Origin: Scyliorhinus canicula
Taxonomy: Eukaryota
Assembly: GCF_902713615.1 (NCBI RefSeq)
Contig: NC_052149.1
Span: forward strand, 49,313,213 to 49,377,212
Reading direction: 5' to 3'
DNA: 64,000 bases
In this document: piece by piece, positions 54,972-56,015 of the stretch
Layout: the number at the start of each line of letters is the position of its first letter
Numbering within the stretch: the stretch's first letter is position 1
Position numbers and translations under genes: made by a program
Notes under the pieces: generated by a model
What the model was told of the DNA's origin: nothing
Seen by the model: only the letters and a program-made list of their open reading frames with translations
The model's database searches: none

Positions 54972-56015
54972 TAATAATAATCTTTATTTTCACAAGTAGG
55001 CTTACATTAACACTGCAATTAAGTTACTGTTAAAAGCCCTTAGTCGCCACATTCCGGCGCCTGTTCGGGTAAACTGAGGTAGAATTCAGAATGTCCAATT
55101 CACCAAACAGCATGGGCGCAATTCTCCGCACTCACGACGGTGCGGAGAATAGCGTGGCTCGTAACATTTTACGGCCACGCTAGTCTGACGCCCTCCCGCT
55201 ATTCTCCCCCCCCCCCCCCCACGCCCGACTGCCGATACGAATCGCTGCCGCCGTTTTTTTACGGCCAGCAGCGATTCTCAGCTGGCCGATGGGCCGAGTT
55301 CCCAGCCCTTTACGGCTGTTTTTACGAACGGCAAACACACCTGGTCTGGCTGTTCGTAAAAACGGCCGTAAAGTCCCGATTTTTAAAACCATGGCACCGA
55401 TTCGCACGGCAGTACCACAGCCGTGCCAAGGGTGCCATGGGCCCGTGGTCGGTGGGCACCGATCGCGGGCAGCGGGTCCGATGCCCGCGCACTCTTTGTC
55501 CTTCCGCCGCCCCGCAGTATCCATTCGCGGGGCGGCTGAGGGGCATCCCGGCCCGCGCATGCGCGGGTTTTGCGCAAATGCGCGATGACGTCATCCGCGC
55601 ATGCGCGGGTTGGAGTCTTCCAATCCGCGCATGCGCGGCTGACGTCATATGACGCGTCAGCCGGCGCAAACTCTGGCAAGCGGGCTTAACGAAATTCGTT
55701 AAGCCCGCGATGCCGGAATTCACGGCCGCGGCTTGCTAGCCCCGACCGGGGACCAGAATCGGTTCCCGGTCGGGGAGGGGGGGCTGACGTCAAACCCGCC
55801 CGGATTTGACGCCAGCCTTACGATTTCTCCCTGTGTGGGAGAATCGCGCCCCATGTCTTTCGGGACTTGTGGGAGGAAACCGGAGCACCCGGAGGAAACC
55901 CACGTAGACAAAGGGAGAACATGCAGACTCCACACAGACAGTGACCCAAGTCAGGAATCGAACCTGGGACCCTGGCGCTGTGAAGCGACAGTGCTAACTA
56001 CTGTGCTACCGTACC
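54972..56015 (-). mobile_element. Type-B V-SINE split by a MITE
   Basis: Halves rejoin as ...caccaaacagCATgtctttcgggacttgtggg..., matching the intact copy at 48944-49244. Confidence 0.88.
55114..55851. mobile_element. Harbinger-type MITE, complete, highly palindromic
   Basis: TIRs gggcgcaattctcc / ggagaatcgcgccc; perfect TSD CAT/CAT. Confidence 0.93.

What the first reader, a model, noticed from the sequence alone, without database searches (positions are those of the whole stretch)
55545..55670. MITE centres carry clustered NRF1-type and CRE palindromes: possible portable CpG-island modules
Seen: this segment has three GCGCATGCGC, one near-match and two TGACGTCA in ~120 bp. GCGCATGCGC also lies centrally in the other large MITEs despite different internal sequences (~2398, ~7393, ~8709, 22022-22033, 23674-23685, ~30517, ~43109). 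The elements are CpG-dense in a CpG-poor background. Known: (T)GCGCATGCGC(A) is the methylation-sensitive NRF1 site and TGACGTCA is the CREB/ATF site. Inference: the motif is retained across families either to recruit host factors that keep the element open or unmethylated, or as a transposition-protein site. Either way the MITEs would scatter candidate regulatory modules every ~5 kb here.
Basis: partly seen in the sequence, partly recalled or inferred. Interest (0 to 1): 0.7.

Follow-up and report, generated by a model that had tools for sequence, protein, structure and literature searches.

The report
NRF1-site core in shark MITEs
A very abundant family of small non-coding jumping genes in this shark genome carries, at one fixed internal position, a perfect binding motif for the host factor NRF1 that is kept as well as the transposon's own ends, but nothing here shows that NRF1 binds it or that it keeps the copies unmethylated.

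Summary
GCGCATGCGC occurs 10 times in the window (0.01 expected), and every copy lies in a 600-740 bp GC-rich element. These elements share GGGCGGGATTCTCC inverted ends and 3-bp target duplications.

- The nine large elements are not unrelated inside. They align end to end as one diverged superfamily.
- The motif is not central. It sits at one homologous spot, 174-230 bp from one end.

It is the best-conserved 10-column block of the alignment (0.975, against 0.91 for the ends and 0.54 on average). It is also the only 10-mer palindrome found in more than one element. The CRE part is weaker: TGACGTCA occurs in only 2 of 9 elements.

My best reading is a host NRF1 (sometimes plus CREB/ATF) docking module selected at the level of the transposon. 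A site for the transposon's own proteins is less likely. An ATTCTCC repeat at both ends fits that role better, and short relatives with the same ends lack the motif.

CpG protection is not supported. CpG decay relative to other transitions matches that of neighbouring SINEs, and one copy has lost the motif by CpG decay.

This scan reported the same thing earlier on other pieces of this genome. No expression, methylation or binding data could be obtained.

The parts
55114..55851 (-). Element J, 738 bp, the copy holding the finding. Non-coding DNA transposon with 14-bp inverted ends, inserted into a SINE.
   Evidence: TIR pattern hits at 55114 and 55838-55851. Full-length profile match. Its flanks join up as one SINE copy. 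CpG o/e 1.23. No Pfam family for its longest ORF.
55111..55113 (.). Left target-site duplication of J (CAT). The right copy is at 55852-55854.
   Evidence: Paralogous SINE copies carry CAYG once at this place. J's host copy has CAT on both sides of the element.
55545..55670 (.). Motif cluster of J. It has three GCGCATGCGC (55555, 55597, 55627), a near-match (55572), two TGACGTCA (55586, 55640) and TGACGCGTCA (55650). It was built by local duplication and includes a 30-nt-arm palindrome.
   Evidence: A 17-nt unit repeats at 55553 and 55595 (100%) and 55625 (88%), and the arms 55585-55614 / 55619-55648 are 93% complementary. The hairpin folds with z = -10.6.
7209..7857 (+). Element B, 649 bp. 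GCGCATGCGC at 7392, a second half-site at 7425, and a decayed CRE (TGATGTCA) at 7381. TSD is TCT.
8536..9215 (+). Element C, 680 bp. GCGCATGCGC at 8709 and a decayed second site (ACGCATGTGC) at 8739. TSD is CAT.
21542..22217 (-). Element E, 676 bp. TGCGCATGCGCA at 22022, inside a 30-bp tandem repeat (21957-22028, 2.4 units).
23500..24137 (+). Element F, 638 bp. TGCGCATGCGCA at 23674, a single site.
   Evidence: The protein search with its 254-aa ORF found nothing.
30287..31001 (+). Element G, 715 bp. GCGCATGCGC at 30516, TGACGTCA at 30544, and a decayed second site at 30557.
34170..34878 (+). Element H, 709 bp, the nearest relative of B. The motif has decayed to ACGCATGTGC (34405). A half-site is intact at 34438, and TGATGTCA lies at 34394.
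42909..43515 (+). Element I, 607 bp. GCGCATGCGC at 43109. TSD is AAG.
2041..2720 (-). Element A, a broken copy. The profile matches in three pieces, interrupted by a 224-bp insertion (2416-2639). GCGCATGCGC at 2398.
31523..31672 (+). Truncated copy holding only the first ~150 positions, so the motif region is absent.
26562..26687 (.). Short element (126 bp) with the same inverted ends and no NRF1-type motif.
29627..29796 (.). Short element (170 bp) with the same ends and no NRF1-type motif. TSD is CAT/CAC.
60515..60693 (.). Short element (~179 bp) with the same ends, a perfect TSD (ATT) and no NRF1-type motif.

Best explanation
Shown: the window holds nine 600-740 bp copies of one diverged superfamily of non-coding cut-and-paste transposons. 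It also holds one truncated copy and three short relatives. The ends are GGGCGGGATTCTCC and the target duplication is 3 bp, which points to the PIF/Harbinger (PHIS) superfamily and comes nearest to its NuwaI group.

Each large copy inherited, 174-230 bp from one end, a module built around the palindrome GCGCATGCGC. The module usually has two sites about 30-40 bp apart. In some lineages it was amplified (J, E) or is flanked by TGACGTCA (J, G). The 10-mer is the most conserved part of the element, more so than the ends, while its surroundings have diverged.

Inferred: the 10-mer is the optimal site of the host factor NRF1, and TGACGTCA is the CREB/ATF site. I therefore think the module is a docking platform for host promoter factors, kept by selection acting on the transposon lineage rather than on individual insertions. 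It would either be the promoter region of the autonomous parent carried along in the non-coding derivatives, or a device that keeps source copies open and unmethylated in germ cells so that the transposase can reach them.

After insertion the copies decay like other repeats. NRF1 is methylation-sensitive, so most copies are probably silent once methylated.
For: - One superfamily: TIR pattern found 28 times against 3.07 expected. There are 3-bp duplications, five of them perfect, and a paralogous empty site for J. Profile matches are full length and alignment A1 covers the whole element.
- Conservation: the motif is the top 10-column block (0.975, against 0.912 for the ends and a mean of 0.536). 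It is the most widely shared 10-mer (8 of 9 elements, against 6 of 9 for end words). It is the only 10-mer palindrome present in more than one element.
- Composition does not explain it: 0.037 expected from shuffles of the elements alone, against 10 observed.
- Sequence rather than hairpin is conserved. The two-site hairpin is strong only in J, B and G (z = -10.6, -5.3, -2.2) and absent in E, F, I and A.
- The site was amplified independently in J and E.
- Bases flanking the 10-mer vary (C, T or G), while E and F carry the full 12-mer consensus.
- Precedent: NRF1 binds and activates unmethylated IAP and L1 promoters in mouse male germ cells (PMC12420836). Harbinger MITEs with palindromic cores sit at open chromatin in Xenopus (PMC12676858).
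Against:
- A non-coding element needs no promoter.
- No autonomous copy is in the window, so the promoter-remnant version is untested.
- At least three other internal blocks are also well conserved, so the NRF1-type block is not the only constrained part and the constraint could serve transposition.
- CpG decay relative to other transitions equals that of SINEs, and H lost the site. So there is no sign of lasting protection.
- Only nine copies from one window were analysed, and no further copies could be fetched.
Confidence: 0.5

Rival explanations
1. The palindrome is a cis-acting site for the transposon's own proteins (transposase or its Myb-like partner). Its identity with the NRF1 consensus is a coincidence.
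For: Conservation equals or exceeds that of the inverted ends. Palindromes suit dimeric DNA-binding proteins. Other internal blocks are conserved too. The whole element is a chain of hairpins with compensatory changes, which suggests structural or cis requirements.
Against: The site occurs at one asymmetric internal position only. A different motif, ATTCTCC/GGAGAAT, is repeated at both ends. That is the arrangement reported for the 9-bp subterminal Myb-like sites of Harbinger3_DR (PMC9710019). Three short elements with the same ends lack the motif, one of them with a perfect ATT duplication. An exact match to a 10-12-mer host consensus, plus an adjacent CRE in some lineages, is unlikely by coincidence.
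Confidence: 0.15
2. The motif is an inert passenger. It was present in the common ancestor, and the copies simply have not had time to lose it. The apparent conservation has no functional cause.
For: All sites are homologous, so they count as one origin. CpG decay looks ordinary. Copy H and the second sites of C and G have decayed by CpG-type changes. High CpG content can be explained by a CpG-rich source and limited age (J has o/e 1.23, the others 0.82-0.99).
Against: The copies differ by 15-45% elsewhere, yet the 10-mer, which holds two fast-decaying CpGs, ranks first of all 10-column blocks. It was duplicated independently in J and E. No other 10-mer palindrome is shared.
Confidence: 0.2
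3. Individual insertions have been taken over by the host as working CpG-island promoters or enhancers. This is the 'portable regulatory module' reading applied to these loci.
For: All nine copies meet CpG-island sequence criteria. They carry promoter-type motifs. MITE-derived enhancers are documented in Xenopus (PMC12676858).
Against: Nothing in the window ties any copy to a gene start. J sits inside a SINE and C inside another transposon's ORF region. Copies lose CpGs and motifs at the ordinary rate. There are no expression or chromatin data.
Confidence: 0.1

Closest known systems
Non-autonomous PIF/Harbinger (PHIS) transposons, especially the NuwaI group (PMC4482050)
   Same: 3-bp target duplication, short inverted ends that begin with GGG, no coding capacity and high copy number. 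The duplicated triplets often begin CA or CT, as in the CWG of NuwaI.
   Different: The triplets are not the TWA of classical Harbinger. Only two (CAG and CTG, each on one side) match CWG exactly, and CAT, AAG, TCT and ATT also occur. No transposase or Myb-like partner with these ends was seen, so the assignment rests on ends and duplications only. NuwaI was not reported from cartilaginous fishes in that survey.
NRF1-dependent promoters of young mouse retrotransposons (IAP, L1) (PMC12420836)
   Same: A mobile element carries sites for the methylation-sensitive factor NRF1. In that system they drive germline activity when methylation fails.
   Different: Those are promoters of coding retrotransposons that need transcription to move. 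Here the carrier is a non-coding cut-and-paste element that needs no transcript of its own. Binding is not shown here.
MITE-derived regulatory elements, e.g. Harbinger-N12A_XT at liver open chromatin in Xenopus tropicalis (PMC12676858)
   Same: A Harbinger-type MITE with an internal palindromic, better-conserved core that carries transcription-factor motifs.
   Different: In Xenopus a small subset of copies overlaps tissue-specific open chromatin, and that is measured. Here there are no chromatin data, and the motif is a housekeeping/germline type kept in nearly every copy.
Vertebrate CpG-island promoters with paired NRF1 and CRE sites
   Same: GC content of 55-71%, CpG o/e of 0.8-1.2, and NRF1 palindromes in pairs, sometimes with a full CRE beside them.
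   Different: They are repeated, bounded by transposon ends and target duplications, and nested in other repeats. No transcription start or unmethylated state has been shown.

Membership tests
MITE / non-autonomous DNA transposon | Terminal inverted repeats | tested here: met
   A 14-bp end, GGGCGGGATTCTCC, is present in inverted orientation at both ends of B, C, E, F, G, I and J. The pattern occurs 28 times against 3.07 expected.
MITE / non-autonomous DNA transposon | Target-site duplication and an empty site | tested here: met
   3-bp duplications are perfect in J, C, B, I and the short element at 60515. They match at 2 of 3 bases in F, G and the element at 29627. Paralogous SINE copies show the undisturbed site of J.
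MITE / non-autonomous DNA transposon | Small size and no coding capacity | tested here: met
   Lengths are 607-738 bp. No Pfam family was found for the longest ORFs of C and J. No homologue was found for the ORF spanning F. Indels between copies are not in multiples of three.
PIF/Harbinger, classical | TWA target-site duplication | tested here: not met
   The triplets are CAT, CAT, TCT, AAG, ATT, CAG, CTG/TTG, ACG/CCG and CAT/CAC. None is TAA or TTA.
PHIS superfamily, NuwaI group | CWG target-site duplication and ends beginning GGG (PMC4482050) | tested here: inconclusive
   Most copies have ends beginning GGG. Exact CWG appears only in E and F, each on one side. Five of nine triplets begin with C followed by A or T.
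PHIS superfamily | Mobilised by a DDE transposase plus a Myb-like partner that share these ends | not testable with these tools
   There is no transposase in the window.
NRF1 binding site | Match to the consensus YGCGCAYGCGCR | tested here: met
   The exact 10-mer core is present in 8 of 9 elements, 10 sites in all. The full 12-mer is at 22022 and 23674.
NRF1 binding site | Occupied by NRF1 in cells, with binding blocked by CpG methylation | not testable with these tools
CRE (CREB/ATF site) | Full palindrome TGACGTCA as a general feature of the elements | tested here: not met
   It is present only in J (three) and G (one). B and H have TGATGTCA at the homologous place, and five elements have nothing.
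CpG island | Sequence criteria (length over 500 bp, GC over 55%, CpG o/e over 0.65) | tested here: met
   All nine copies have GC 0.55-0.71 and o/e 0.82-1.23 over 607-738 bp.
CpG island | Unmethylated in the germline, so CpGs are spared from decay | tested here: inconclusive
   The CpG/non-CpG transition ratio is 2.0 (H) and 2.9 (B), against 2.5 in SINE copies of the same window. This shows no sign of sparing, but the numbers are small and the outgroup is distant.

The most novel reading that the evidence does not exclude
A superfamily of non-coding DNA transposons depends on a host NRF1 (and CREB/ATF) docking module as part of its own life cycle. The module would keep source copies unmethylated and open in germ cells so that a transposase supplied in trans can move them. 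The elements would then be self-spreading CpG islands that supply most of the genome's perfect NRF1 sites and raw material for new promoters.
Probability: 0.15. Interest if true: 0.75.

Novelty: new member of a known kind. Interest (0 to 1): 0.4.

Why it matters
Mobile elements that carry host transcription-factor sites are well known. What stands out here is that a non-coding cut-and-paste element keeps a host promoter motif as strictly as its own ends. That raises the question of what a promoter factor does for an element with nothing to express.

There are also two practical points:
- In this window the elements account for 9 of about 12 CpG-island-like stretches, 36% of all CpGs and all ten perfect NRF1 motifs. 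CpG-island and NRF1-site predictions in this shark genome will therefore be dominated by one repeat family unless it is masked.
- If the same density (about one per 5-7 kb) holds genome-wide, these copies would far outnumber gene promoters as potential NRF1 sites. Methylation would then be needed to hide them.

Tried and rejected
Nothing was laid. The Rfam scan stopped at 55900, the empty-site comparison stopped at 55895, and the SINE control left that copy out. Local scripts that read the whole window file did run on the closed machine. These were the profile scan, with the window as target, and the motif counts.
- More copies: the protein word search with the 254-aa ORF spanning element F gave nothing.
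- Literature: no paper in the held library joins GCGCATGCGC with transposons or describes this shark family. Sinzelle et al. 2008 is not held.
- Known RNA families: none in 1-55900.
- 'The palindrome is conserved as a hairpin': rejected. The hairpin is strong in only three of nine copies.
- 'The motif is just GC-rich palindromic DNA': rejected.
- Coding potential of the long ORFs inside the elements: rejected.
- Species: run and organism names are coded. The label 'catshark' comes from earlier notes of this scan, and I did not verify it.

Full report
**Observation**

The segment 55545-55670 holds three exact GCGCATGCGC (55555, 55597, 55627), the near-match GCGCAAATGCGC (55572), two TGACGTCA (55586, 55640) and a TGACGCGTCA (55650). 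It has six TGACGTCA against 0.56 expected. All ten NRF1-type sites lie in GC-rich stretches of 600-740 bp.

**What the stretches are**

They share a 14-bp inverted end, GGGCGGGATTCTCC. The pattern occurs 28 times with up to three mismatches, against 3.07 expected. The elements are flanked by 3-bp target duplications. These are perfect in J (CAT), C (CAT), B (TCT), I (AAG) and a short element at 60515 (ATT), and match at two of three bases in three more.

For J the insertion can be seen directly. Its flanks join into one SINE copy. Three paralogous SINE copies carry CAYG once where J's host copy has CAT, then the element, then CAT G.

A profile built from eight elements finds nine large copies:
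- A at 2041-2720, broken by a 224-bp insertion
- B at 7209-7857
- C at 8536-9215
- E at 21542-22217
- F at 23500-24137
- G at 30287-31001
- H at 34170-34878
- I at 42909-43515
- J at 55114-55851

It also finds a truncated copy at 31523-31672. Three short elements of 126-179 bp have the same ends.

None of the elements codes for anything recognisable, and no known RNA family matches. So these are MITE-type non-autonomous DNA transposons.

The 3-bp duplication points to the PIF/Harbinger (PHIS) superfamily. The triplets are not the classical TWA. The GGG start of the ends and the frequent CA/CT start of the triplets come closest to the NuwaI group, which has CWG duplications and GGG ends and is known mainly from bony fish (PMC4482050). 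Without the transposase this stays provisional.

- The elements do not have different internal sequences. They align over their full length, with a mean column identity of 54%.
- The motif is not central. Once the elements are oriented alike, it lies 174-230 bp from one end, which is 26-39% of the element length.

The ten sites therefore descend from one ancestral module, not from independent retention in unrelated families.

**Is the motif special?**

Yes. In the eight-element alignment it is the best-conserved 10-column block (0.975). The two ends score 0.912 and the mean is 0.536.

An alignment-free count agrees. GCGCATGCGC is the 10-mer shared by the most elements (8 of 9), ahead of the end words (6 of 9).

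Dinucleotide-preserving shuffles of the elements alone control for their GC and CpG richness. They give 0.037 sites against 10 observed.

Of all 1024 possible 10-mer palindromes, only nine occur at all in the elements, and this is the only one found in more than one element.

The bases next to the 10-mer vary (C, T or G), and E and F have the full 12-mer TGCGCATGCGCA.

The ancestral module seems to have had two sites 30-40 bp apart, since a second full or half site is present in A, B, C, E, G, H and J. The site was amplified further in J by local duplication and in E by a 30-bp tandem repeat.

**The CRE part is weaker**

TGACGTCA occurs in J (three times) and G (once) only. B and H have TGATGTCA at the homologous place, which is a CpG-to-TpG change, and five elements have nothing. 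The other two TGACGTCA in the window (8117, 9487) are outside these elements.

**Sequence or structure?**

Whole elements fold far better as single strands than shuffles do (z = -15.8 for J, -8.9 for B, -5.2 for G). The consensus fold has 23 pairs with compensatory changes. So a chain of local palindromes is a real property of the family.

The hairpin that holds the two NRF1-type sites is strong only in J, B and G (z = -10.6, -5.3, -2.2). It is absent or weak in the other six. The conserved feature is the 10-mer itself.

**Host factor or transposon protein?**

A different short motif, ATTCTCC/GGAGAAT, sits in the 5' end and recurs several times, in both orientations, in the last ~200 bp of every element. 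This is the layout reported for the 9-bp subterminal sites of the Myb-like protein of Harbinger3_DR (PMC9710019).

GCGCATGCGC occurs at one asymmetric internal place only. The three short elements with the same ends lack it, and one has a perfect duplication showing that it transposed.

Together with the exact match to the NRF1 optimum and the neighbouring CRE in some lineages, this makes a host-factor site more likely than a transposase site. At least three other internal blocks are also well conserved (ATCGGTGGGC with CGCGGGCC, GGGGCTAGGA, CGGAGAATCG). So constraint on the element is not limited to the NRF1-type block.

**CpG content and decay**

The nine copies have CpG o/e 0.82-1.23 at 55-71% GC. 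The rest of the window has o/e 0.39 at 44% GC. The copies make up 9.5% of the window and hold 36% of its CpGs.

B and H, the closest pair, are 85% identical in aligned columns, and 25 of their 43 transitions are CpG to TpG/CpA. I polarised the changes with J as outgroup. CpG transitions per site are then 2.0 times (H) and 2.9 times (B) the non-CpG transitions. A control on ten SINE copies of the same window gives 2.5 times. So I see no sparing of CpGs in the MITEs.

The numbers are small, J is a distant outgroup, and the SINE consensus comes from few copies. The test is therefore weak.

H has lost the motif (ACGCATGTGC at 34405), and the second sites of C and G have decayed the same way.

The simplest reading is a CpG-rich source sequence plus limited age after insertion, with most divergence between copies arising among source lineages. 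That reading fits with the 10-mer being kept by selection in those lineages.

**Mechanism**

I commit, at about 0.5, to this reading: the module is a docking site for host NRF1 (with CREB/ATF in some lineages), maintained by selection on the transposon lineage. Two versions cannot be separated here:
- It is the promoter region of the autonomous parent, carried into the non-coding derivatives.
- It keeps source copies open and unmethylated in germ cells so that the transposase can reach them.

The nearest documented parallel is NRF1 binding and activating unmethylated IAP and L1 promoters in mouse male germ cells (PMC12420836). MITE cores carrying factor motifs at open chromatin are documented for a Harbinger MITE in Xenopus (PMC12676858). 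The anatomy and the conservation are shown here. The identity of the binding protein and any effect on chromatin or methylation are inferred.

**What could not be done**

I then kept those letters out of all search tools.
- No further copies could be fetched.
- Organism names are coded.

**Earlier notes of this scan**

Earlier notes on other pieces of the same genome make the same observation. Their follow-ups reached similar conclusions: an abundant Harbinger-type non-coding element, a site kept as well as the ends, and an unknown binder. This window adds:
- the empty-site proof
- the palindrome-specificity test
- the short relatives without the motif
- the subterminal ATTCTCC repeats
- the hairpin test
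- the SINE-controlled CpG-decay comparison

**Verdict**

This is a real, non-random and well-conserved feature of a known kind, a transposon family carrying host promoter motifs. It is a new member of that kind rather than a new kind of system. Interest is moderate (0.4). The question it raises, why a non-coding cut-and-paste element keeps a promoter-factor site as strictly as its ends, is testable with methylome, ATAC and NRF1 binding data.

Noticed in passing
window 55114-55851, 7209-7857, 30287-31001: Whole elements are chains of local palindromes. Single-strand folding gives z = -15.8, -8.9 and -5.2 against shuffles, and 23 of 80 consensus pairs keep pairing through changes on both sides across subfamilies. 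I do not know why a cut-and-paste element should preserve hairpins along its whole body.
   Followed up: partly
alignment A1 columns 469-506, 172-181, 659-685 (e.g. window 7530-7556 in B): Other internal blocks are conserved almost as well as the ends: ATCGGTGGGC followed by CGCGGGCC (containing CGATCG twice in some copies), GGGGCTAGGA, and CTCGGCCCAT with CGGAGAATCG. No function is assigned.
   Followed up: no
window 8420-8535 and 9216-9365: Element C is inserted into an open frame. After the insertion the frame reads like the N-terminal zinc-finger region of a hAT-type transposase (this reading is from my own knowledge and was not tested with a family scan). The two TGACGTCA outside the MITEs (8117, 9487) lie in this surrounding element.
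   Followed up: no
window 2416-2639 and 1044-1267: A 224-bp repeat that is 94.6% identical to a copy 1.4 kb away is inserted into element A, right next to its NRF1-type site.
   Followed up: no
window 19795-20147, 42492-42844, 12893-13242: A ~350-bp SINE has at least 11 copies in the window. Three of them are 96-98.6% identical to each other, so the family looks recently active. J is inserted into an older copy whose CACG had already decayed to CATG.
   Followed up: partly
window 24644-24819: A long G-run region (24664-24701) faces a long C-run region (24770-24819) about 80-100 bp away, forming a homopolymer inverted repeat.
   Followed up: no
alignment A1 columns ~409-416 (e.g. window 23709-23716 in F): A CATGGCGG word (an ATG in a Kozak-like setting) lies about 45-60 bp after the NRF1-type module in four or five of eight copies. 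It could be a relic of a start codon of an autonomous parent. Frame is not preserved between copies.
   Followed up: partly
window 10084-10872 (-) and 18743-19228 (+): There is a reverse-transcriptase ORF (RVT_1, E = 1.2e-27) and a weak retrotransposon gag match. The CpG-rich stretch 18.7-20.8 kb belongs to a retroelement, not to the MITE family.
   Followed up: partly
I left them out of all later searches.
   Followed up: no
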